From Ascidiella aspersa (lineage: Eukaryota), in contig OZ004615.1 of assembly GCA_963924565.1 (NCBI GenBank), positions 20,274,001 to 20,338,000 of the forward strand: 64,000 nt of DNA, written 5' to 3'. Each line of letters begins with the position of its first letter. Within the stretch, counting starts at the first letter, position 1. The position numbers and the translations under genes are program-made. The notes under the pieces are model-generated. The model was given only the letters and a program-made list of their open reading frames with translations, made no database searches and was not told the origin of the DNA. Positions 23,301 through 63,741 of the stretch are shown here, piece by piece.

Positions 23301-26300
23301 CTAGCTCTGAAAAGGAAGAGACCATCGATAAAGATTCGCTGCGACTCTCGATGGAAGACTTTGAAGTCGAGTCCGGAGGTTCGTCGCCGAAATCGAAGTC
23401 TTCCGAGGAGCCGCACATCGACACTGTGAGGAGACTCTCTCCTCTTCAAGACAAGGAAACCTCCGAAAGATCTCCGGAGAAGAAGAAGACGAGTCTTCCT
23501 CATATAGCAGCGCAGAGGAAGTTACCGTCGCTGCCTCCGATCTCTGGCGCCCAGATTCCAGGCTCTTCCTCATTTTCTCAACCGACGCCATTTAGAAGAG
23601 CGAATCCTCCAAAAGATGCAGAATTCGGTGGACGTAGTGTTTTCACGGCAAGCGTCGGAAGCTCCTCCTCCGATTCTTTGGAGGTGGAGGAGGCGATCGA
23701 GTCTGCATCGGATGCGAGCAAAAGTGAGTCCCGGGACGCCTCGGATCCTGTATTCTCGCTGCAAAAAGTCCCGGCGGATTTGAGCGGTGGTATGGATCCC
23801 AAAAAAGAAAATTCATACGAAGACAGTTTCGAGGAGGATGAAAAATCGTCTGCGGACGAAAGGTGAGGATAGAATTTAAACTTTCGATCTAATTTACAGT
23901 TTAAACAAAAAGATGTTTTATTGCGAAATTCTGGATTAATGTAGGTTTTATGCTAATCGGTGTTTTATTTACCAGTGCAAAGAAACTTGAAGAATCACTT
24001 TCTGAATTCTCATCGGTGTCCATTGATCTGCCCTCGGGAAAATCTTCACAGCGCTCCATTCCACCAATACGACAGGTTATAAGCAAGGCCCTGTTGTATA
24101 ATTTAATTTAAGTTAAAATGACCAGCCAAAATTTAACACGTGAAACACCTTTAAAATATTTCCTAAGTTCAATTGAGATGTTTTTTTATTTAGGTTTCGT
24201 GTTTTCACACCTTATCCTTATTTGGTCAGGACAGGCTAATAAATAGGCAAATTACGTTGCTGATTTAAACTGTACATTGTGTTGGAGAGCAATAGTAACT
24301 ATGTTTTTTAACTAATAATAGTAAACCGGATGCCTTCGGCACGCCTTTCTGAAATCAGTTAATTTATTCAGCCGCGGTGAACAAAGGTTAAAAAAAGCAA
24401 GCCTGTAGTTAGGTTTGAATCCACGATCTCGGCCGAACCGAGCACGTCGCTTTATCGACTGAAATGTTTGAGAGGCGGCCATAGCGCCGTCTCCTGCTAC
24501 ATCTTGTTTGTGCATACAACCTAATTTAAAGGAAATTTTTACCTGGTGTAGGGAACGTGCCATCAGGCAGATGGCTAATTTGAAAAAGAAAATATTATTT
24601 GTTGTGTAAGTAACGTTTTATGTACAACAGCGATCCTACACATTTTTAAAGTACCTTATAGCGAAATGTTACTTTTTATCAATTACCGTATTAGGTTTGT
24701 AAAGGGAATCTAACAAAGTTGCCCTTTACTGCTGGATGAGGCAAGAAATGGTGCTATGGTTGTTTCTCGACTCGCTCCCTTCTGAGCCTGCGTAGCTCAG
24801 TTGGTAGAGCGAAGGTCCCGCTAGGACCGGAGGTCGTGAGTTCGAACCTCGCCGCAGGCTAGTTGTTTTTCTTGCTTGCACTACAATCGTGATCAGGCTG
24901 ACTGACTTCGGTAGGCCTCTCCGAAGGCATCTTTTGCATAGGCGCTGAACGTGTGTGTCCAGAGCGTTTTTAGACGCCCTGGATTTCTCGTATGTCGTCA
25001 AAATGCCCTAGAATTCAAAGTTTTCAATTTTTCAATAAATGTGCAAATTAATTTCTTTAGAAGAGTCTTAGTTAACCAAAAGTGTTTAAAATTTTCCTGA
25101 ATTACCACAAACAGACACGAGGCCATAGAATCCTCGAAACTATGTTTTTTAAGTTTTATGCAATTTTTTTTTAAATTGTTGTTACGACTTGCCCATTTCA
25201 ATAAAAACTTTGCACTGTCTAGAAAATAACGCCCTGGAATTTCGAAAGTTCAGCGCCTATGATCTTGTGTTCTATATATGGGCGCCGTTATCGTTGTCCA
25301 GTACGACTCCATAAGTGCTTGTTCACAGAATACACATTGTGTACAACTGTATCTGTATGTTTCAGTTGTTTTACCAGCCAATTGTGATACTCCTAATATA
25401 TCGGAATTCTTGTATCGCCTAAACAAGTCCACACTGAAATATTTTCAGAAACGGCAAATACCCCAGCTGACGTCATTCGATGATGACGCAATTAACGCCG
25501 CGCTCAAGTGGGGAGAAGACAACCAGCTGAAGCTGTCGGAAGACGAAAGCCACGATTACGCTCCACCTCCTCAAAGTAGTCCTCCCAAAACAGATCCTGG
25601 AAACAAGGAAGAAGATTGGAGAGAGGACGGGAGCAAGATGAAGGATCAGAATGTAGAAGAGATTCAGGAGGACGTGGATGTGTTCGAAGCCTCTGCATCT
25701 CAGATCTCCTTCGAGTCGGAAACAAGCAGGTAATTATGCGACTGTGAAGCGTTTGTTTTAATTTTGGCCAAACTTAGTACCACGCATCTTGCATTCCGAC
25801 AACTTGTTAGGGTTCGACACAATGTGCGTGCACCATGTGCTGTTATACTTTGCAGCGCCACTAGTAGGATTCTTGTGCAGACTAATATTGTTTCGGTCGT
25901 CTTGTGTAAGTATTGCAACTCTTGGCATTTAAAATCATAATTTTCGAAAACGGGACAAACCACTATACTTATTGTTAACCTAGTATTTAGGTATTTTTAG
26001 TAAGGCAATGCAGAAAATTGTCGTTACTGTTATTCTTTTGTTATGATAATATTAACTACGAGAATCCTGTTTGATCGAGGCACATATTTGCATTACGCCT
26101 TTAATCGCGCAAGTATCCAGTTTCAGACTTTGTTTTCTTGCCACTTTAAGATCTCAGGGGTAAAAATAGTTTCCGTGATGTCCGGGTTTTATTATAGATA
26201 GTTTCCGTAAAGGTGGGAAATAAAAGGCGACTGAGGCTTTGTGAAAAATGCCTGACGTATTTCGAGGTTCGCTACAACAAATTTACATCTCTATCTTGAA

Positions 26301-48800: not shown

Positions 48801-51800
48801 ATTTAAACGGAATATACAATATTCTTGTTTCGGGGGGAAAATAGTACAAGAAGTTTTAAGACATTTTCCGCATTTTTTTTTCAATTTCTGTCCAAACCCG
48901 TTACATTATATAAAGCCAACAGTTTTTCGCAAGCAATCTAAAGAAAGTTGAATCTTGGAATCACAGGGGAAGTCCGGTTAAAACTCAAGAGCAAAGTTGA
49001 GTAATATTTAAAAAAAAAAAACGCACATGCGTCACACTTACGTAAGCAAACCGATTTCGTTTATTTTCGTACCGGTTTGGAAGGACAGAAATTTAAACGG
49101 AATATAAAGCATACTTGTTTTGGGGGGAAATGTAGGAGAAGCTTTACGACTTGTTTCGTAATTTTTTAATTTTTATTTTCTATGCAAACCCGTTACTTTT
49201 TATAGAGCCACCTTTTTCACAAGCAATCCCGAAGTTGTTTGATTCGCCTTGCTGGCAAAAGTAACAGACTTAGCGTGTAAAGAACTTGTTAAGCTTTTCG
49301 ACATAAAAAGCCACGAAAAAAAACAATTAAGTTGCTGCGACTTATGACATTTTTCTCTTTTTTATATTTTTCCATTTTTTTGTTTTTCGTCATTTGTTTT
49401 CTACTCGAATCGCTAACACCACAATAGAGCACAACCTCCGTTGAACTTTGATATATTTAGATTTTTACTCAAAGTTGAATAATTAAGCATACACTTGGGT
49501 ACACTATGCACGGATCTGTAATGTAGCTTAATAATAAATTTCAAAGCCAAAAAGGTCGAGTAGATCGACACCATCTTTATTAAGACACACTAACATACTA
49601 ATCACACTAACTGAAGATGATACAAGTTCGTATCGAAACGTCTTAATCAAAATGCTGTCGATCTACTCGACCTTTTTGGCTTCGAAATTTATTATTAAAC
49701 ATATACTTTTTTTCATAAAGTATTAGAAATAAGAAAAATCTGCAAAATTTTAGCTATATGCTAAATGCAATTTCTTCGTGGCATGGTTTTAAGCGTGTAT
49801 AGGCGTACCATATAACTACGTAATAAATCGAACACATTCTCGGCATAAATGATTTATGGGCTCGGCGAAGACTGACGTTTGAAATCTAGTTAAATTTGCG
49901 TCGTAGTCGATAGATATGGGAGAGGGTCCGAGAAAGTTACGCCGTCTTCGACTTAAGTATTTTTAATTTTGTGTTTTGTTACTACATGAACCCTTCAATA
50001 GCCTTGCAAAAATGTAACAAAATTAAAAAAACAACGCTTAAAACGATAATTGCCAAAATATAGCCAAAGGTGCACTTGTGATTAGTTTTGTTGCGTTATA
50101 CATAAAAACACGCAATAAAAAACGTCTTTAAATCACTCGTAAGCGATGAATGGCCTTCATTCGTACGGCAGTTATAACCCGGCATTTTAGGCGGAAGATA
50201 ATTGTAAGGTAGTCGGGTAAATTTCGCCGGCAGATGCTCACTTTGAAATGCGCATTTATAGGTATTTTACATAGTTTTAATTTCTCTTACTTCGGTCTTT
50301 AATAAATAAATAATAACAACGAAGGTTGTAGTTTACTCTTTTGTTATTGGTCCATTTTTGCAAACAAAACTCCCAAATTGTCAAGTTTTCGAAAATATAG
50401 GTCTATTGGAGTTCGTATTTCGTATTTATTGTTTTCCTTAGATTTATTGTCATGCATCTAATACCCAAAAACAAAACAAGCCTAAACGGCCGTTAAAACA
50501 GAAAAAAATACCTCATTGTTAAGATTGCATGTAAAACGCTACAAAACTATTGTATGTTTTTTTACATACCCGCGCGAAAAAGTAAAGGTGCTCTTCGACT
50601 GTGAGTTTGTCGAAGAGAATGTTGTGCTGCGGGCAATATCCAAGCGACTGGCGGACGCCGCGCAGGTCCTTTGTGATGCTATGACCGAGCACCGAGGCCT
50701 CTCCGGAGGTGGGTGGGAAAAAACCTGTAAAGGTGGATTTTTTACTGCAAAGGTGTACTCCAGTGATTCTCAACCTTTTATGGCCAACGGCACCCCTCAA
50801 AAATAATAAATAGATTTTTGGCGCCCCGACCGGAATTTTTTGAGTATTTTACTGAAATAATGGAACTGATACAATACAATCAACTTAAAACATGTAGGAA
50901 AATGTAATTTGATTTCATGGTCTCTAATCGTACACAAATTGGTTTATCAAAAAGCTTACCAATGGAGCAAAAAATCAGATTCTTTAAAATTCTTAAATAC
51001 CTAATGGGCATTTATAAATGCATTACCCTTGAGTATTAGAAAATTGAGCATTAGAAATGGCACACCAGGGCGCCGCGACACCCCGATTGTGAACCACTGG
51101 TGCAGTTGATTAACTCTATCGCTTAAAGTACGATTTAAGTGATATTGATACTAAAGTCGGTAAGTTGGCAAAAGTTTTTCTATAAGATTAGTCGGCAACC
51201 TGTGGACCTTTCGTATCTGTGCTCTGGCTCCTGTGACTCAGAGACATTAAGCTCATTTTTTAAATTGGAATAAATAATTAGTGCTGTTAGTGCAACAATG
51301 CAATACCTTATTGCGTGTGTAAGATTATTGTTATTTAGGATTTATTCCGACGCGTAAAATCGTATACAAATGCTATGCTTAGTATTTTGGAGCTTGTTTA
51401 ATTTATACTATACATTAATCTTTGTTTGGTGACTATGTGGGTTGGTATCGTTGTAATTAACATTAAACGGTTTACGTGTGTATCTACAAAGCATTTGTGT
51501 TAACATATATATATAAAGCGCTAAGTTTTTGTTTTACCTAGTTAATTGATACTGTGCTATTTTTGAACGAACCGAACCAAAACATGCCACAAAAGATGGC
51601 AAAAAGTGACCGTATTTGTCTAATTATAAATTGGGTAAGTTTTCATAAGGTCAAAGTGAAAACTAACTATTTTCTACTGATGAAGCACGGACGTACGAAA
51701 GTTTGTCGAGGATTCAATACAATTAGTCTTTTTATAGTAGCCTACCACCTGGTGTCCGAAAATTTGAACATTGTTGTGAGGCAGTGGTATGGCGCCCTGT

Positions 51801-57800: not shown

Positions 57801-60800
57801 ACCACACTTCAATTTGTTCTGAAACATTGGTTTGGAGCCAACACTTTTTTGTCTAGTTGAGAAAACTAGGATAAAAGGCGTTTTTTTATTTTTTTCTACA
57901 AAACATACCTTTGAAAAGCACTGTTATAGATTATAACAAAAAAACTCAAAGTTTAAAAACCCGAGCAATACCAGAATCAGACATTTTTAAAGGAATATAT
58001 ATTTTGCCTAACACTCGCTGCCAATGGTTTTGGATTCCACAAAGATACACCATGTCATAGATTGTTATATGCGCGTGATAATTTACCTGTAGCATGGTAA
58101 AGTTGTCGTCTACCGTTACCGAGCTGTTTAGATTGCTCCATTGAAGACCAGAACCTTGGAAATATGAAGTTCTTATTGAATGCAGACTAATTGAAAACAC
58201 TTTTCATCACCCGACAAAAAGAAAAAATCAAGTATTTTTAGAACCTTGAAAAGATAAAATTGTCATTGAATGCAGACTTATTGAAAACACTTTTCATCAC
58301 CCGACAAAAAGAAAAAATCAAGTATTTTTAGAACCTTGAAAAGATAAAATTGTCATTGAATGCAGACTAATTGAAAACACTTTTCATCACCCGACAAAAA
58401 GAAAAAATCAAGTATTTTTAGAACCTTGAAAAGATAAAATTGTCATTGAATGCAGACTTATTGAAAACACTTTTTATCACCAAACAAACAAAAAAACTGA
58501 AATATTTTTTTAGCGCTATAGAAAACCATTATATTAGGCCAAACACCTGAAACAGCAGAAGATGGAACGAAATTCCGTCGACTAATTACGGGCATTTCCA
58601 ATTCTCCGAAGTCTAATTAATTTCACGTCTTAACCCGGAAATGTGTTACAACGAGTCTCGCTAATTAAAGGGTCGGTCGATACGATAAACCGTTAATTGA
58701 GGACAATCTACTTCCAAAAAATAATGCTAAGCCGGCGAAAGCAAACCTTTTCCCTCGAACATTCCGATCAACTGACAGCCGTTGGCCATGGCTACGTTGG
58801 AAAGCAGGCAAGACACCACCTTAACGGCCAGGCTCAGCTGGTCGTAGCTGTTCTCCATAAAGAGATACGGCATGTAGGTCAGACCGTACAGCACACCGCC
58901 GGCCGCTGCGCCTACATTGGCTGCGAAAGAATTGGATGGAAATAAACGAAACGTCGTTCACTGTAGCTTTGTCGCAATGGAAGAGTCCAGCCCAGGTGTG
59001 GGCAATTATTTTTAACATTAAGGCGCCGCATGAAAGACACAAAATGTCTTGGCGGGCCGGATTGAAAAGGGGATTTGAAATACACATAAAATAAACTAAA
59101 GTGTGGCTCCTTTGTAACGATATCTATAAATATTTTAGTTTAGATAAGCTGGTAAGAGTATGGGAATAAGTGAAGATATCTTGCTTGTATTATTCATTCA
59201 ACAAAGATTCCAAAAGTACAAAAAGTTTTACAAAAAGTATGCCGCGGGCCGTAGTTTACCCAGGTCTGGTCTATAGCTGCTAGGTATATGTCAAATCTTT
59301 TTGAGCCAGTGCTAAAACGCAATGCATATAGACTATAGTGGTAGTAGCGGTACCAGTCCAATAATAAGGTGGTATTGGTACTGTTTAACCACGTCTATTT
59401 ACCCTCTTCGTCCATGGTTTAACGCTAAGACTCACTTTGTTAAAGCTAAAGCTGATTTTGGCGAAACTACCACATTTGAAGGTTAATATTTTTATTAATT
59501 CGGTACAAAAATATTGTCTATTGCGTTTGGATAGGACGGTAGGGGAATTTCGAGTGTCAACTTCTAAAATTCAATGCAACTTCTCCAAAATTAAATAGTT
59601 TGTATAGCTAGGCTAACACGTAGCTATAATTGGTACAACTACCTGACTACAGCATTCAGGTCGAAACTTTATTTATTAGTTTGGCTAGGGTGACCAGTAC
59701 AGAAGAACATGTAGAATTGAGATGTCACCCTTCCCATAAGGCGTTACAGCATGAAGCAATAATCAATAACGGACGTCTCCCGAAGTGTGTGCGTTCCGAG
59801 TCGGTCGTGCCATTCACCCGACGTTTGACAAGTTCCAAGAACTTTTCTGTCACCAAGAAGCCTGTCACTGCTTTACGACATAGATGGCACACAGTCCGAA
59901 ACTAATGACGTGCGTTTGACAATATTTGATTTTCGCCTTATCACCTATCAGCATTTGAGAGATATACTGAATGCTCGTTGACTGTTTTTTTCTTACTTTT
60001 TGGCATGACTTAATAATAATGGACCGCTTAAATCATGCTTTTAACTTAAAAAAATGGTTTTAAATCGCCAAATAAGTGAGAAAAATTCTTGATAAATTGG
60101 AAAATTCTTAATAATTCCATTTAAGGTTAAATTTAATAACAGTTGTAAAAATTGAATTAAAGTCACCATGTCACAAACAGAGCCCCAAAACACTGCATAA
60201 TAATGTTCCAGGTCACGGCAAGATTAAAAAGAATGAAAATTAATCGAAGACAAACTTATTTTAAACCCCCAAATTTCAGCCGCACATTTTGCGAATTGCA
60301 AAACAAACAAAAAAAATTTAATAGAAAATGCATTTTTATACAAATTCGCACAAATTCTTTGATTTGACCGGCTACCAGAAAAACACAAGACATGTGCCAA
60401 GCCTAAAAGCTTCCTTATGTCAAAACCCGGCAATTTAAATAGTTTTTTTCCACGAACCACAATCGATTTTAACACAATGGCGAACCGGATTACAGAAACC
60501 CCCGCGCGAAGCACAACAGCTAAGCGTGCCTTTGTGTTGCTTGAAGTATACTTATGCAAAATACACCAGTACCACGTATCCTTGTCATTCTAAATGTATG
60601 GATTATATTCACTAAATTCTCTATCAAGTGATAGGATCTCTATAAATAGGAACGGCAATAACTGGTAACTTAAGAAAACGAATTCACATTGTGCTTTGTA
60701 AAATACTTGAACACTATTTGGCCTTAACCTAGCAGCGGGTCGGCCATCATATGATATCAACGCTTTCACTAATTAGTATCAAGACGCATGTGGACATATT

Positions 60801-63741
60801 GCTGGACTTAAAACTTTCTATCGCCTTTACCAGGGTTTGTGCTTCTGCTGTGTGCATTTCAGTTGACCCTTACTTTGACCTGATGAAGCACGGTTGTACG
60901 AAAGCTTGTCGACATTACAATACAATTTGACGTTCAGAGTGCCACCTGACTTCCTGATTCATATTTACATGCAAGACACAAGGCCAATGGCATAGGCGCC
61001 GAACGTGGGTGTGTAGAGAGTTTTTAGATGCCCTGGATTTCTCCTAGAGCGTCAAAGCGCCCTGGAATTCAACCAAGTTATCAATAAACGCTAATTTATG
61101 TAGCACAGTGTGAACATAAAGTTTTAAAAGGCGAAATGGTTGGCTCAATGATAACCGATAACAATTGTTATTTAAGAGCTCACATTTTTTATCTAATTAA
61201 AAATCAATTTTGCACTGTCTAGTCTAGAAAATGACGCCCTGAAATTTTAAAAGTTCGCCGCCTATGGATTAAAAGTTACCTTTGGAGAAGAATACCGAGA
61301 TAAGAAAGGCCAGGTTGATTGTGGCGGCGGCAAAGAGAATAAGGAAGACGAAAATCACGGTCGCGTCACTGTTGGTCAACACACTTCCGTAGCGCGTCTG
61401 TAAAAAAAGTGGCAATGATATATAGATCAGTGTTTCTCAACCTTTTTTCGCGGCTACCCAAACTATGAGCGTTCGTAGGTATAACAGTAGGGTGTATCTT
61501 TATAGAATCCAAAACCATCGGCAGCAGGTTTTAGCCAGTCGATCACTGCTCCGCTGACGCGTATATTAACAAGTAAAAGTCACAGTTAAAAACAGGAGTA
61601 AAAACAGGATCAGACGTTTTGTTTAAAGGAAAATATATTTCGCCAAGGTGTAACAGCGAAACCTTGGCGATCCAATTTATTTTCAATGAATTATTTTAAG
61701 CAAATACAACACAAGTGATTAGCATTTATTGTAAGTTTAATTAATATGAGCTGTATCTTCGTTTTGTTTTTCGCTAATTGCTCGGAATCAATCTCAATAA
61801 ATTTAACTATCAAACTCAGCAGTCTGCGACCCAACCAAATCAATCGGCGAATAATTTGAGGGGCCAAACTGGCTATTAAAATGAAGGTTAATGTACGGTG
61901 CAGGCAGATCGAACAACAATAAAGATGTTAATACGAAATATTCTAAATATCATGTACTCTCAGATCCTGAATACCGTAATTTTACTGACAATAAGAAACT
62001 TTCCAAACAATATTTAGGCAAAAACACATATCAGAAAATTCTATTTCAATAAGGGACTGACGATGCCAGTAAAAGCGAAAAATATATTCCTTTATAAAAA
62101 AAGTCTGCGCGGGCTTTTAAACTTGAGAGTTTTATTGTCAATATACGCGTCAGCGAAACAGTAATCGACAAGCAGAAACCGGCTCACAATGATTTTGGAT
62201 TCCATAAAGATACGCCCTTTTAAACATATCAGCAAAGATACTTAAATAAGGAAATGACGATGCCAGTATAGGCGAAATATATCTCCTTTAAAAAATGCCT
62301 GATCCTGGTTTTACTCAGGTTTTTAAACTTTGAGTTTTATAGTTTGTATACGCGTCAGCGGAACAGTGATCGACAAGCAGAAACCTGCTGCAAATGTTTT
62401 GGATTCCATAAAAATACAACCTTTTAAATATCAGCAAAAATATTTTAGATCCGCCTACCGGTATTTTGTAAAAGGCTGCCATAAACACGCAGGATATGGC
62501 GACGAAGATGAGATACTTGAGAAACCAGGCGAGCCAGTGCAGCCAGTTGGACAGACCCATCATCATCATGTATTCCTACACAAAGAAGCCAAATTACAGA
62601 ATTTTAGCTGAAATTGGTAGTTGAGGGGTATAGAAAGTATTTATATAACCCTTGCGGTAGCAGACTTACTAAACAATTGGTTTAACATTTAAACAAAACT
62701 AAGCTTTTCACAAATAAAAACTGTGAAAAAAATGTCAAATTTCCTGTAATATTTTTTGGTGCAAAATATTTTTTGTTTTAGATTTTGTTAGACACTTGGA
62801 AGTCGAATTAAATTAATTGGAGTGACTAACTTTTCTTAAAGGTCTAGGTCAGGGATTCTTAAACTTTTTTTACCGCGCACCCCTAAAATTTTATTTTACC
62901 TGGCGTGGACCACGATAGGCGAGAAATTTCCATAATGACGTCATAAATTGACGTTACAATACAAATAGACCTCAGAAATCTGCCGATTTCAGTACAAAAA
63001 ATGTGAAAGTGTATTGGAGCCAACATTCAGTGCAAATCGTTTTAATTTTAATTAAAGTTATTTTAAAAATTTATTAGTTTTTAAATGTATACTACTGTTT
63101 CCATTAGGCCTTCATGGACCCCCTAAAACTAGTTCATGAACCCCCAAGGGGTCCATGGACCCCAGTTTAAGAACCCCTGCTCTAGGTCAACCTGCATATG
63201 TTTTAAAATAAAGAATCTTTTCTAATAATCACGTATTAACCTTCATCTTTAGTTCTTTTTCGTGGACAACACTTTTGACAATAAGCAGGGCCGTGTAGAA
63301 AAAGCTGAGCATAATAAGAAGTGGAAGAGTCCTTTGAATAGCCACTGAAATTTGAAAAAGTAACACGATTTAAAAAATAAAATTTTTGCATTCATGTCAA
63401 AATAATGAATTTGGCTCAAATAAGTTTATCTGTGTTTTGCTTATTAGTCTTTTGACCTAAATTTGTGGCGGAATTTTTATGGAAAAAAGAGCTGAGATTA
63501 ATGGTGAAAATAACGGCCCAAATAGACATAAAAAGCGACATTAAACTTATGAACAGATCCGTATATAGTGTTCCAAAGTGCTGAGAATTAGGTATTTGAA
63601 CAAATAACCATTCAAAATAGATACTTATAAAATTGTCAAAATACATACTTATAAAATTGTCTTCCAAGTAAGGTGGGTATGGGTATCGCTTGAGCGCAAT
63701 TGAAGTTTGCAGATTTTCATTTTTTGCTAAAACTCCAGCCA
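30884..63741 (-). CDS. ABCA3: ABC transporter subfamily A, full transporter (ABCA3-like); 31 exons in window, 5' end beyond the window
   Basis: Exons 5'->3': 63649-63741, 63241-63344, 62459-62575, 61280-61397, 58747-58920, 58087-58154, 57273-57386, 55857-56048, 52633-52762, 50570-50724, 48217-48372, 47320-47500, 46399-46481, 45593-45789, 44456-44598, 43383-43489, 42857 (or 42869)-42965, 42194-42298, 40226-40354, 39074-39260, 38483-38687, 37424-37637, 36044-36196, 35637-35830, 35385-35516, 34550-34750, 33788-33975, 32963-33133, 31622-31806, 31209-31297, 30884-31024 (TAA). NBD1: [42 protein letters not shown]2: [46 protein letters not shown]-type motifs [35 protein letters not shown]. Subfamily A is secure; exact orthology to ABCA3 is less so. 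Confidence 0.9.
34978..35100. repeat. Tandem repeat, 47-bp unit x~2.6
   Basis: aaaattggtaaactcgtgc recurs at about 34978, 35025 and 35072. Confidence 0.85.
38766..38880 (+). mobile_element. Decayed family 2 hammerhead/pLTR copy
   Basis: tgaaaga-g-GATAC aagttt GTATC-GAAA-GG-TC-TTA followed by ...ctttttggctttgcaatt...tattacagatccgt, homologous to 49500-49700. Confidence 0.55.
40383..40783. mobile_element. hAT-type MITE (TAGAGATAGACCG family)
   Basis: TIR tagagatagaccgata / tatcggtcgatctcta; TSD gttaaatg/gttaaaag. A further copy lies at about 55465-55790. Confidence 0.8.
41460..42190. repeat. Tandem repeat, 144-bp unit x~5
   Basis: gtgccttt at 41488, 41632, 41776, 41920 and 42065; inner copies are nearly identical. 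Confidence 0.95.
43943..44078 (+). mobile_element. tRNA-derived repeat copy
   Basis: gcctgtgtagctcagttggtagag...agttcgaacctcactgcacgctagttatttttctagcctgccttgcttg. Confidence 0.65.
46033..46155 (+). mobile_element. Penelope-like pLTR remnant with hammerhead motif, family 1 (GAAA->AAAA core mutation)
   Basis: TTGAT-CTGATGA-A-GCAC gctt GTGT-AAAA-TC-TT-GTCAA plus tail ...aatacaatgtgtctttatatagtgccacctgattacc...ggccatttacaaagatt. Confidence 0.65.
47600..47760 (-). mobile_element. Penelope-like pLTR remnant, family 1 hammerhead flanked by an inverted copy of its own tail
   Basis: Minus strand reads CTGATGA-A-GCGC gttt GTAC-GAAA-GA-TT-GTAAA (about 47642-47674). Inverted arms: ggtgaccatgtataaagacaaattttattgaa / ttcaatacaatttgtctttatacagtgtcacc. 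Confidence 0.65.
48390..49230. repeat. Diverged tandem repeat, ~290-310-bp unit x3
   Basis: gcacctgcgtcacacttacgtaag..aaccgattt...aacggaatata recurs at about 48427, 48738 and 49023. Confidence 0.75.
49500..49700 (+). mobile_element. Penelope-like pLTR remnant, family 2: intact minimal hammerhead (49607-49646) between 59-bp inverted arms
   Basis: TAA-CTGAAGA-T-GATAC aagttc GTATC-GAAA-CG-TC-TTA. Arms 49528-49586 and 49640-49698 match at 55/59 positions. Confidence 0.75.
50761..51099. mobile_element. hAT-type MITE (diverged)
   Basis: Termini cagtgattctcaa / ttgtgaaccactg; degenerate TSD gtgtactc/gtgcagtt. Confidence 0.55.
51595..51757 (+). mobile_element. Penelope-like pLTR remnant, family 1 hammerhead
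   Basis: CTGATGA-A-GCAC ggac GTAC-GAAA-GT-TT-GTCGAG at 51677-51710, with tail caatacaattagtcttt...ccacctg and an upstream inverted tail fragment (gaccgtatttgtctaatt). Confidence 0.6.
52930..53021. repeat. Perfect 41-bp inverted repeat with 10-nt loop
   Basis: tcaactggactagaagacttgaatgtctttattcgaatgaa-ctataaattt-ttcattcgaataaagacattcaagtcttctagtccagttga. Confidence 0.95.
55363..55466 (+). mobile_element. Penelope-like pLTR remnant, family 1 hammerhead (CTAATGA core mutation), preceded by inverted tail
   Basis: TTGAC-CTAATGA-A-GCAC ggtt GTGC-GAAA-GC-TT-GTCGA at 55429-55466. The segment 55363-55418 is approximately the reverse complement of the tail at 46098-46152. Confidence 0.65.
56135..56232 (-). 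mobile_element. tRNA-derived repeat copy (5' truncated)
   Basis: Reverse complement contains ggaggtcgtgagttcgaacctcactgcaggctagttgtttctctagcctgccttgcttg...gtctgcgatggcttt. Confidence 0.65.
58150..58490. repeat. Tandem repeat, 90-bp unit x~3.8, overlapping an ABCA splice acceptor
   Basis: gaaccttg at 58151, 58241, 58331 and 58421. Confidence 0.92.
60875..60912 (+). ncRNA. Minimal type I hammerhead ribozyme motif, family 1, core intact
   Basis: TTGAC-CTGATGA-A-GCAC ggtt GTAC-GAAA-GC-TT-GTCGA. Stem I TTGAC/GTCGA, stem II with one mismatch, palindromic AGCU at stem III. Followed by the family tail (caatacaattt...gtgccacctga). Confidence 0.75.
60991..61266. mobile_element. MITE (CATAGGCGC family), second copy
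   Basis: cataggcgccgaac ... gttcgccgcctatg; internal sequence homologous to 24937-25261. Confidence 0.7.
61489..61644 (-). mobile_element. Inverted partial copy of the family 3 unit
   Basis: Reverse complement reads ggcgaaatatattttcctttaaac...tatacgcgtcagcggagcagtgatcgac...ttttggattctataaagatacaccct, matching the 62028-62445 units. Confidence 0.65.
62028..62445 (+). mobile_element. Tandem ~197-bp units, each carrying a minimal hammerhead (family 3; retrozyme/pLTR-like)
   Basis: Unit 1: AAGGGA-CTGACGA-T-GC cagtaaaa GC-GAAA-AATA-TA-TTCCTT (62051-62092). Unit 2: AAGGA-aATGACGA-T-GCC agtata GGC-GAAA-TATA-TC-TCCTT (62248-62288). The rest of the units align (tatacgcgtcagcg..acagt.atcgacaagcagaaacc...ttttggattccataaa). 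Confidence 0.7.
62850..63179. mobile_element. hAT-type MITE (CAGGGGTTCTTAAACT family, opposite orientation)
   Basis: TIR cagggattcttaaact / agtttaagaacccctg; TSD gtctaggt/ctctaggt. Confidence 0.85.

What the first reader, a model, noticed from the sequence alone, without database searches (positions are those of the whole stretch)
61489..62445. Tandem 197-nt hammerhead units with an upstream inverted copy: a possible circRNA-producing retrozyme
Seen: two head-to-tail units with hammerhead cores 197 nt apart (62057 and 62254), plus an inverted partial unit at 61489-61644. Unit 1 keeps CUGACGA/GAAA/UA and a 6-bp stem I. Unit 2 has the better stem II and the AUAUAU palindrome but a C3->A change. 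Established: tandem hammerhead repeats of roughly this size release monomers that can circularise, and adjacent minimal hammerheads can fold as a dimer. Inference: the ancestral element produced a ~197-nt RNA. These copies are antisense to the ABCA pre-mRNA, so they would not cut it.
Basis: partly seen in the sequence, partly recalled or inferred. Interest (0 to 1): 0.8.

Follow-up and report, generated by a model that had tools for sequence, protein, structure and literature searches.

The report
Decayed Penelope-element hammerhead repeats in intron
The two tandem repeats and the inverted copy are real, but they are worn-out end pieces of a Penelope-like jumping gene that carries a known kind of minimal hammerhead ribozyme, so the locus is an ordinary transposon relic and not a new circular-RNA factory.

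Summary
Window 62028-62445 has two head-to-tail units, with boxes 197 nt apart at 62057 and 62254, and 61486-61644 is an inverted copy.

The family is abundant in this genome: at least 1485 candidate copies, and 277 copies match the 24-nt ribozyme core with at most one mismatch. Its majority sequence is a complete minimal type I hammerhead. It has CUGACGA, one unpaired U after A9, a GCC/GGC helix II, GAAA, an AUAUAU palindrome as helix III and GGAA/UUCC as helix I.

Three other families in the same genome share this architecture with different but still complementary helices. Two of them lie about 375 nt downstream of RT plus GIY-YIG ORFs. This family's own hammerhead lies about 250 nt downstream of a GIY-YIG ORF end (L017), and copies form a 5'-truncation series into that 3'UTR and ORF. 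These are the features of Penelope-like element (PLE) min-HHRs published in 2014.

Both window ribozymes are mutated (C3 to A in unit 2; broken helix II and palindrome in unit 1), and the inverted copy lacks the CUGANGA box. Tandem copies are rare: two clear loci in this genome, including this one, plus one doubtful match. One RNA run showed no circular junctions and no cleavage ends.

The retrozyme/circRNA reading is therefore only partly supported. This is a new member of a known kind, of low interest. Other first-reader notes from this scan already flag hammerhead elements elsewhere in this genome.

The parts
61486..61644 (-). Inverted copy of the unit. It holds the tail and body and is 5'-truncated inside the ribozyme. 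Homology to the family starts at GGCGAAA, so there is no CUGANGA box. It lies in the sense of the host gene.
   Evidence: 84% identity to L029 over 161 nt. The aligned sequence shows the missing box.
61641..61669 (-). Perfect 8-bp hairpin (61641-61648 with 61662-61669) at the truncation point of the inverted copy. It replaces the 5' half of the ribozyme.
   Evidence: Read. It explains the weak microRNA-like Rfam hits (far below gathering scores).
61645..62027 (+). Spacer between the inverted copy and the tandem units. It carries a separate genomic repeat with its core at 61778-61850, possibly PLE 3'UTR sequence.
   Evidence: 145 candidate copies. One copy lies 0.74 kb downstream of a GIY-YIG hit on the same strand (C4:8119299). 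There is no match to the PLE loci in hand, so its identity is inferred only.
62028..62224 (+). Unit 1: short leader, hammerhead (62051-62092), body and a tail of about 80 nt. The core boxes are intact. Position 11.3 is G to A (62074), which breaks helix II. Position 15.2 is U to A (62081), which breaks the palindrome.
   Evidence: Identity to the family majority is 85.7%. The strict descriptor fails on this unit.
62225..62445 (+). Unit 2: leader, hammerhead (about 62248-62288), body, tail and a partial third leader (62428-62445). The changes are C3 to A at 62254 and a 1-nt deletion in the 3' strand of helix I.
   Evidence: (repeat family D4). Identity to the family majority is 90.1%.
61398..62458 (-). 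Inferred host intron of about 1.06 kb. About 90% of it is the PLE-derived complex, and the tandem ends about 13-15 nt from the inferred 5' splice site.
   Evidence: Inferred from the ORF 62315-62569 and the GT/AG motifs read. It was not checked with RNA reads.

Best explanation
The locus is an old, inactive complex insertion of the 3'-terminal module of a canonical Penelope-like retroelement (RT plus C-terminal GIY-YIG endonuclease). It sits in a small intron of an ABC-transporter gene.

Each unit has four parts: a short leader, a minimal type I hammerhead, about 60 nt of body, and a tail of about 80 nt. The ribozyme has no helix III hairpin, only a 6-nt palindrome. By analogy with published PLE min-HHRs it can therefore be active only when two copies pair, as in tandem or multimeric element transcripts. 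Its presumed job is to process the element's own precursor RNA.

The arrangement matches what PLE integration typically leaves: a partial tandem (units 1 and 2) and an inverted 5'-truncated copy upstream. All three copies are now dead. Unit 2 lost C3, unit 1 lost helix II and the palindrome, and the inverted copy never had the first catalytic box. Nothing here should cut the host pre-mRNA or release a 197-nt RNA today.

Shown: repeat anatomy, family membership, linkage to the PLE ORF, covariation between families, and the mutations. Inferred: that all three copies came from one insertion event, that the ribozyme self-cleaves, and the splice sites.
For: 1. Family size and shape: at least 1485 candidate copies. 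The alignment of 33 copies gives sharp ends and an intact ribozyme in most.
2. Published hallmarks: tabulates four families of this genome. All have CUGANGA, one extra nt after A9, G10.1-C11.1 and a palindromic 15.1-16.1 (AUAUAU, AUGCAU, AGCU, ACGU). Their helices I and II differ in sequence but stay complementary. These are the hallmarks listed in PMC4209133.
3. Link to autonomous elements:
- L073:2941-5388 is an 816-aa ORF with RVT_1 and GIY-YIG, with its hammerhead about 375 nt downstream.
- In L017, a GIY-YIG ORF end (1920-2564) is followed by a 250-nt 3'UTR and then this family's hammerhead (2816-2855).
- Other copies extend into that 3'UTR and ORF for variable lengths.
- About 10 of the 43 exact ribozyme copies directly abut such 3'UTR hits.
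4. Retroelement signs: target-site duplications of about 9 to 15 bp, in one case enclosing the inverted arm. DNA depth rises towards the 3' end. The tail sits at only one end of an insertion. Head-to-head pairs are common.
5. Age: the window units are 86% and 90% identical to the majority, against 94.6% on average for other copies. They have 4 shared and 18+12 private changes.
Against: - No cleavage assay and no in vivo ends were obtained. Thermodynamic folds are not significant on their own (z about -1).
- Rfam hammerhead models give no hit.
- Subfamilies with a fixed 5' end about 12-18 nt upstream of the ribozyme, flanked directly by target-site duplications, could be a non-autonomous lineage rather than truncated copies. 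The window units belong to a related leader type, not to the type that grades into the ORF.
- The 380-nt spacer is not shown to be part of the same element.
Confidence: 0.85

Rival explanations
1. A true non-autonomous retrozyme: a ~200-nt tandem element is transcribed, cut by paired hammerheads into monomers, circularised by a host ligase, and copied back into DNA by PLE enzymes. On this reading the window dimer is a decayed master locus.
For: - The dimer has both ribozymes in phase.
- It formed at or near insertion.
- A second junction of the same kind exists in L033, and a trimer at C1:6640891-6641432.
- Some copies have a fixed 5' end and direct target-site duplications.
- The literature proposes that retrozymes derive from PLE pLTRs (bioRxiv 10.64898/2026.07.22.740005).
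Against: - Tandems amount to two clear loci in this genome, plus one doubtful match, against 277 near-intact cores.
- The ribozyme is the minimal PLE type, not the canonical type with loop-loop contacts that defines animal retrozymes (PMC7229834).
- Copies grade into a coding element.
- RNA reads show no go-back joints and no end pile-ups, and 97% continue into foreign flanks. Only about 6% of one standard RNA-seq cDNA run (selection method not on record) was read, so this is weak negative evidence.
Confidence: 0.1
2. An ordinary interspersed repeat (MITE- or SINE-like) whose hammerhead resemblance is a coincidence of short AT-rich motifs.
For: There are no Rfam hits and fold energies are unremarkable.
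Against: - The descriptor has a chance rate of 0.07 per 64 kb.
- Four families share the architecture with compensatory helices.
- The motif sits at a fixed position downstream of RT/GIY-YIG ORFs.
- It matches published PLE min-HHR hallmarks, including the extra nucleotide after A9.
Confidence: 0.02
3. The dimer arose by a local duplication of a solo copy after insertion, not by the element's own integration mechanism.
For: A few shared derived changes exist (4), and tandems are rare in the family.
Against: Private changes (18 and 12) far outnumber shared ones, so any duplication happened very soon after insertion. The leader sequence is repeated three times in register (62027, 62226, 62428), as in a more-than-unit-length copy. 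A second family tandem, L033, has the same layout.
Confidence: 0.03

Closest known systems
Minimal hammerhead ribozymes (min-HHR) in the flanking repeats of Penelope-like elements (Cervera and de la Pena 2014, PMC4209133)
   Same: - Type I topology with the CUGANGA and GAAA boxes.
- One unpaired nucleotide between A9 and G10.1, and a G10.1-C11.1 pair.
- No real helix III, only a short palindrome.
- Several covarying families per genome.
- Mostly single motifs from truncated elements.
- Pairs on opposite strands 100-700 bp apart.
- Located downstream of an RT/GIY-YIG ORF.
   Different: Helix II is short here (3 bp), whereas the Schistosoma families have 7-8 bp. Activity was not assayed.
Canonical EN+ Penelope-like element insertion architecture (Craig et al. 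2021, PMC8557442)
   Same: - Strong 5' truncation.
- Partial tandems.
- An inverted 5'-truncated copy at the 5' side.
- An extension (tail) at only one end.
- Some insertions in (TA)n.
- The hammerhead lies near the 3' end.
   Different: The tail here is about 80-95 nt and conserved within a family, whereas 30-40 bp is reported. In the window the inverted copy is separated from the tandem by 380 nt.
Animal non-LTR retrozymes (Cervera and de la Pena 2020, PMC7229834)
   Same: A short AT-rich unit of about 200 nt, head-to-tail copies with one hammerhead each, target-site duplications longer than 4 bp, and coexistence with PLEs.
   Different: Retrozymes carry canonical type I ribozymes, form arrays from dimers up to many units, and are seen as abundant circular RNAs. 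This family is almost entirely solo, carries the minimal variant, is continuous with a coding element, and showed no circular junction reads.

Membership tests
PLE minimal hammerhead (min-HHR) | Catalytic boxes CUGANGA and GAAA, with a UH cleavage site | tested here: met
   Met in the family majority and in 21 of the copies scanned. In the window, unit 1 keeps the boxes, unit 2 has A at C3 (62254), and the inverted copy lacks the first box.
PLE minimal hammerhead (min-HHR) | [quoted passage not shown] | tested here: met
   the extra nucleotide is U, U, A and U in the four families. All four start helix II with G and end it with C.
PLE minimal hammerhead (min-HHR) | Palindromic 15.2-16.2 / loop 3 in place of a stable helix III | tested here: met
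   AUAUAU, AUGCAU, AGCU and ACGU are all self-complementary.
PLE minimal hammerhead (min-HHR) | Families within one genome related by covariation in helices I and II | tested here: met
   Helix I: GGAA/UUCC, ACAAA/UUUGU, UUUGAC/GUCGAG, GUUAA/UUGAU. Helix II: GCC/GGC, GCAC/GUGC, GAUAC/GUAUC. This compares four families. Within this family there is too little variation to test.
PLE minimal hammerhead (min-HHR) | Location in the repeat or 3' region of an element encoding RT plus GIY-YIG | tested here: met
PLE minimal hammerhead (min-HHR) | Self-cleavage, as a dimer | not testable with these tools
   The RNA reads showed no end pile-up at the predicted site, but the library and depth do not suit that question.
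Animal non-LTR retrozyme | Short tandem repeats (150-450 bp), from dimers to large multimers, as the usual genomic form | tested here: not met
   The window is a dimer, but genome-wide only this locus (period 197), one trimer (periods 255-276) and one doubtful pair were found, against 277 near-intact cores. L033 adds one decayed junction.
Animal non-LTR retrozyme | Canonical type I hammerhead with defined helix sizes and loop 1-loop 2 contacts | tested here: not met
   It is the minimal variant with an open helix I and no loop 1. There is no Rfam Hammerhead_1 hit.
Animal non-LTR retrozyme | Expression as monomer-length linear and circular RNA | tested here: inconclusive
   361 reads in both orientations, 97% running into unlike flanks, and no go-back joints. 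Only one RNA-seq cDNA run was available, and about 6% of it was read.
Animal non-LTR retrozyme | Non-autonomous: no coding capacity and no continuity with a coding element | tested here: inconclusive
   The window copies are non-coding. One subfamily is continuous with a PLE ORF. Subfamilies with a fixed 5' end could be non-autonomous.
PLE complex insertion | 5'-truncation series, partial tandem, upstream inverted 5'-truncated copy, tail at one end | tested here: met
   Truncation series: and the depth gradient. Tandem. Inverted arms, in one case inside the target-site duplication. Tail at one end only.

The most novel reading that the evidence does not exclude
The leader subfamilies with a fixed 5' end, to whose relatives the window units belong, may be a separate non-autonomous lineage of about 200 nt that borrows the PLE machinery. 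Rare tandem loci such as this one and C1:6640891-6641432 would then be the only places where two minimal hammerheads can pair, cleave and yield monomer or circular RNA. That would be a retrozyme built on the minimal ribozyme instead of the canonical one.
Probability: 0.1. Interest if true: 0.45.

Novelty: new member of a known kind. Interest (0 to 1): 0.2.

Why it matters
The result shows that the hammerhead-like repeats in this gene's introns are transposon debris of a well-described type. They should not be read as a host regulatory ribozyme or a new circular-RNA system.

The useful by-products are a clean local example of covariation among PLE ribozyme families in one genome, and of the one-sided tail of PLE insertions. 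That tail is longer here (80-95 nt) than usually reported, which bears on the still unknown integration mechanism of these elements.

Tried and rejected
- Rfam: scans at gathering and at E<=10, and Hammerhead_1 over the whole genome, gave no hammerhead hit. I do not take this as evidence against the motif, because minimal variants lack helix III.
- Tandem Repeats Finder missed the dimer.
- Single-sequence folding gave weak z-scores and cannot decide.
- MAFFT misaligned the ribozymes of different families. I parsed helices with a descriptor script instead and did not run the count of structure pairs or build a covariance model.
- A MITE reading was dropped. Target-site duplications vary in length (about 9-15 bp), there are no terminal inverted repeats of the unit itself, and copies are 5'-truncated.
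- I tested whether the tail is the 5' end of the full element. In PLE-A the tail is not found upstream of the ORF.
For the same reason one search returned no loci.
- RNA reads were laid on a near-majority solo copy (L009), not on the window. The transcription state of this particular locus was therefore not examined.
- I did not try to name the organism. The tools code its name, and the large protein search was not needed.
Full report
**1. What is in the window**

Reading 61300-62700 and searching it for repeats confirms two head-to-tail units.
- Unit 1 spans about 62028-62224 and unit 2 about 62225-62445. They are about 80% alike.
- A copy of the same sequence lies in reverse orientation at 61486-61644, with 77% complementarity to both units.
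CTGACGA is at 62057 in unit 1. ATGACGA is at 62254 in unit 2, 197 nt later.
- The predicted cleavage sites fall after 62086 and 62283.
- A short leader is repeated three times in register: before unit 1, between the units, and after unit 2 (family D4). The array is therefore slightly more than two units long.
- Tandem Repeats Finder does not list the dimer.
- Rfam finds no hammerhead at gathering thresholds, at E<=10 on this stretch, or genome-wide with Hammerhead_1.

**2. It is a large repeat family with an intact ribozyme**

- The window's own genome is 308 Mb in 75 contigs, and the window is C9:20274001-20338000. It holds at least 1485 candidate copies.
- Word depth in two runs whose kind is not on record (apparently genomic DNA) suggests roughly 1,600 copies of the ribozyme part and roughly 5,000 of the 3' part. 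This is a rough figure.
- An alignment of 33 copies with flanks shows a unit of about 185 nt with sharp ends.
- The majority sequence reads, in order: helix I strand GGAA, CUGACGA, one extra U, helix II GCC/GGC with loop AGUAUA, GAAA, the palindrome AUAUAU whose last U is 16.1, A17, and helix I strand UUCC.
- A strict descriptor for this architecture gives 0.07 hits per shuffled 64 kb and none in the real window. It gives 21 hits of this family in the 29 other loci.
- The 34-nt majority motif occurs 43 times exactly in the genome, with 0 in the reversed control.
- The 24-nt core occurs 277 times with at most one mismatch, again with 0 in the control.

**3. The family is the end of a Penelope-like element**

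- A genome scan for GIY-YIG domains gave at least 62 hits.
- About 375 nt after its stop lies a hammerhead with the same layout and the same helix II as our family, but a different helix I (ACAAA/UUUGU) and palindrome (AUGCAU).
- A second type, PLE-B, carries yet another version: extra A, helix II GCAC/GUGC, palindrome AGCU.
- A fourth family is present in the window itself at 49608-49645: extra U, helix II GAUAC/GUAUC, palindrome ACGU.
- In L017, the end of a GIY-YIG frame (1920-2564) is followed by a 250-nt 3'UTR and then by exactly this family's ribozyme at 2816-2855. That frame scores 22.4 bits against a cut-off of 22.6 and is 65% identical in DNA to the PLE-A ORF.
- Other copies of the family extend upstream into that 3'UTR and ORF by different lengths.
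- Genome-wide, the ORF-end/3'UTR segment has at least 51 matches whose start points are scattered, many of which end next to the ribozyme.
- About ten of the 43 exact ribozyme copies abut such a segment.
- This is a 5'-truncation series of a retroelement.
- Target-site duplications of about 9 to 15 bp flank individual copies. In one case they enclose an inverted arm as well.
- A few copies sit in (TA)n.

**4. Fit to what is published**

Cervera and de la Pena (PMC4209133) described minimal hammerheads in the flanking repeats of PLEs across animals. They listed four features that argue against chance:
- covarying consensus families within a genome;
- the G10.1-C11.1 pair;
- palindromic 15.2-16.2 or loop 3.

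All four are met here.

They also noted that most motifs are single and probably come from truncated PLEs, that pairs occur on opposite strands 100-700 bp apart, and that activity in vitro is low and needs a dimer.

Craig et al. (PMC8557442) describe PLE insertions as strongly 5'-truncated. They are often partial tandems, often have an inverted 5'-truncated copy at the 5' side, and have a short tail at one end only. I see the same features here:
- Inverted arms end at about unit position 105 and lack the last ~80 nt, while the main copy carries them. In L017 it is the reverse.
- PLE-A behaves the same way, with a tail of about 95 nt.

The window's arrangement of an inverted copy followed by two tandem units is this architecture.

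**5. State of the window copies**

- Unit 1 keeps both boxes. It has G to A at 62074, which breaks the third pair of a 3-bp helix II, and U to A at 62081, which destroys the palindrome.
- Unit 2 has A for the essential C3 at 62254 and a 1-nt deletion in the 3' strand of helix I.
- The inverted copy is homologous only from GGCGAAA onwards. In place of the first half of the ribozyme there is an 8-bp hairpin (61641-61669), so it never had a CUGANGA box.
- The units are 85.7% and 90.1% identical to the family majority, against 94.6% on average for other copies. They share only 4 derived changes against 18 and 12 private ones. The dimer is therefore old and formed at or very near the time of insertion.
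- The host gene is on the minus strand. The exon at 52526-52825 hits ABC_tran, and the Walker and signature motifs visible look ABCA-like to me.
- From GT/AG motifs and the reading frame I infer an intron at 61398-62458, about 90% of which is this insertion.
The gene-sense copy is the one without a catalytic box.

**6. Is it a retrozyme that makes circles?**

[quoted passage not shown] A 2026 preprint argues that they derive from PLE pLTRs. Three lines of evidence speak against that reading here.

- **Tandems are rare.** With exact 11-nt boxes on the same strand:
  - spacing of 189-219 nt is found only at this locus;
  - 249-279 nt is found only in one trimer on C1;
  - 219-249 nt is found once, in a doubtful match;
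  - a junction search adds one decayed dimer, L033.
- **The junctions exist as DNA at single-copy depth.** The two runs that appear to be genomic DNA show the window's and L033's junction forms at about single-copy depth.
- **RNA gives no support.** Only one RNA run was available.
  - Raw reads, about 6% of the run, were laid at 88% likeness on a near-majority solo copy (L009:1300-1900).
  - This gave 361 family reads in both orientations, and 97% continue into sequence unlike the local flanks.
  - There was no go-back joint and no place where molecules begin or end.
  - The reads therefore come from copies embedded in longer transcripts.
  - This is weak negative evidence, because a standard cDNA library loses small non-polyadenylated RNAs.

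The ribozyme is the minimal PLE variant, not the canonical one. I therefore file the locus under PLE min-HHR relics and keep the retrozyme reading at about 10%.

**7. Limits**

- No activity data exist.
- The 380-nt spacer (61645-62027) is a separate repeat with 145 candidate copies. One of those copies lies 0.74 kb downstream of a GIY-YIG hit on the same strand. I estimate a chance coincidence of about 0.004, but this is one case only, so treating the spacer as 3'UTR of the same insertion is an inference.
- The window units carry a leader type different from the one that grades into the ORF. Copies with a fixed 5' end may be a non-autonomous lineage.
- I could not fetch more genome sequence.
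I propose tests only on natural copies and none that would mobilise an element.

Noticed in passing
window 49608-49645 (+); also L002:3317-3358: A second minimal hammerhead family: CUGAAGA, extra U, 5-bp helix II GAUAC/GUAUC, palindrome ACGU, cut after C. It is intact in the window by a slightly relaxed descriptor (helix I only 3 bp).
   Followed up: partly
window 61023-61088 (-) and 24969-25039 (-): Motifs with a UUGAUAA / UUGAAAA first box and GAAA appeared when the core was relaxed. They may be the U3:A8 covariant hammerhead core known from Cercyon PLEs. Their helices were not examined.
   Followed up: no
window 57935-58069: Another fragment of the same unit family: an 80-nt stretch that matches both arms of L029, plus a 53-nt piece of the tail.
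   Followed up: no
window 24786-24860 (+): A tRNA gene (Rfam tRNA, 45.3 bits). It was the only Rfam hit above gathering score in the window.
   Followed up: no
L029, L017, L075, L078: The tail of PLE insertions is 80-95 nt here, conserved within a family, and present at only one end of an insertion (either the main copy or the inverted one). The tail part of this family has about 3 times the DNA depth of the ribozyme part.
   Followed up: partly
L073:2606-2735 and L073:5952-6081: A 130-nt direct repeat (96% identity) flanks the PLE-A copy, starting right after its tail. This looks like a more-than-unit-length insertion.
   Followed up: no
G000:C2:30628752-30640503: Four GIY-YIG hits on one strand with a spacing of exactly 3,422 bp, each in a frame of up to 293 aa. 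A fifth hit lies on the other strand close by. This is probably a tandem array of PLE copies.
   Followed up: no
L009:1404-1446: An unrelated short repeat with very high DNA depth (about 800 times single copy). It is also seen in RNA reads that run on into other sequence.
   Followed up: no
window 61398-62458 (-): The inferred host intron is about 90% transposon-derived, and the insertion ends about 13-15 nt from the inferred 5' splice site, apparently without disrupting it.
   Followed up: no
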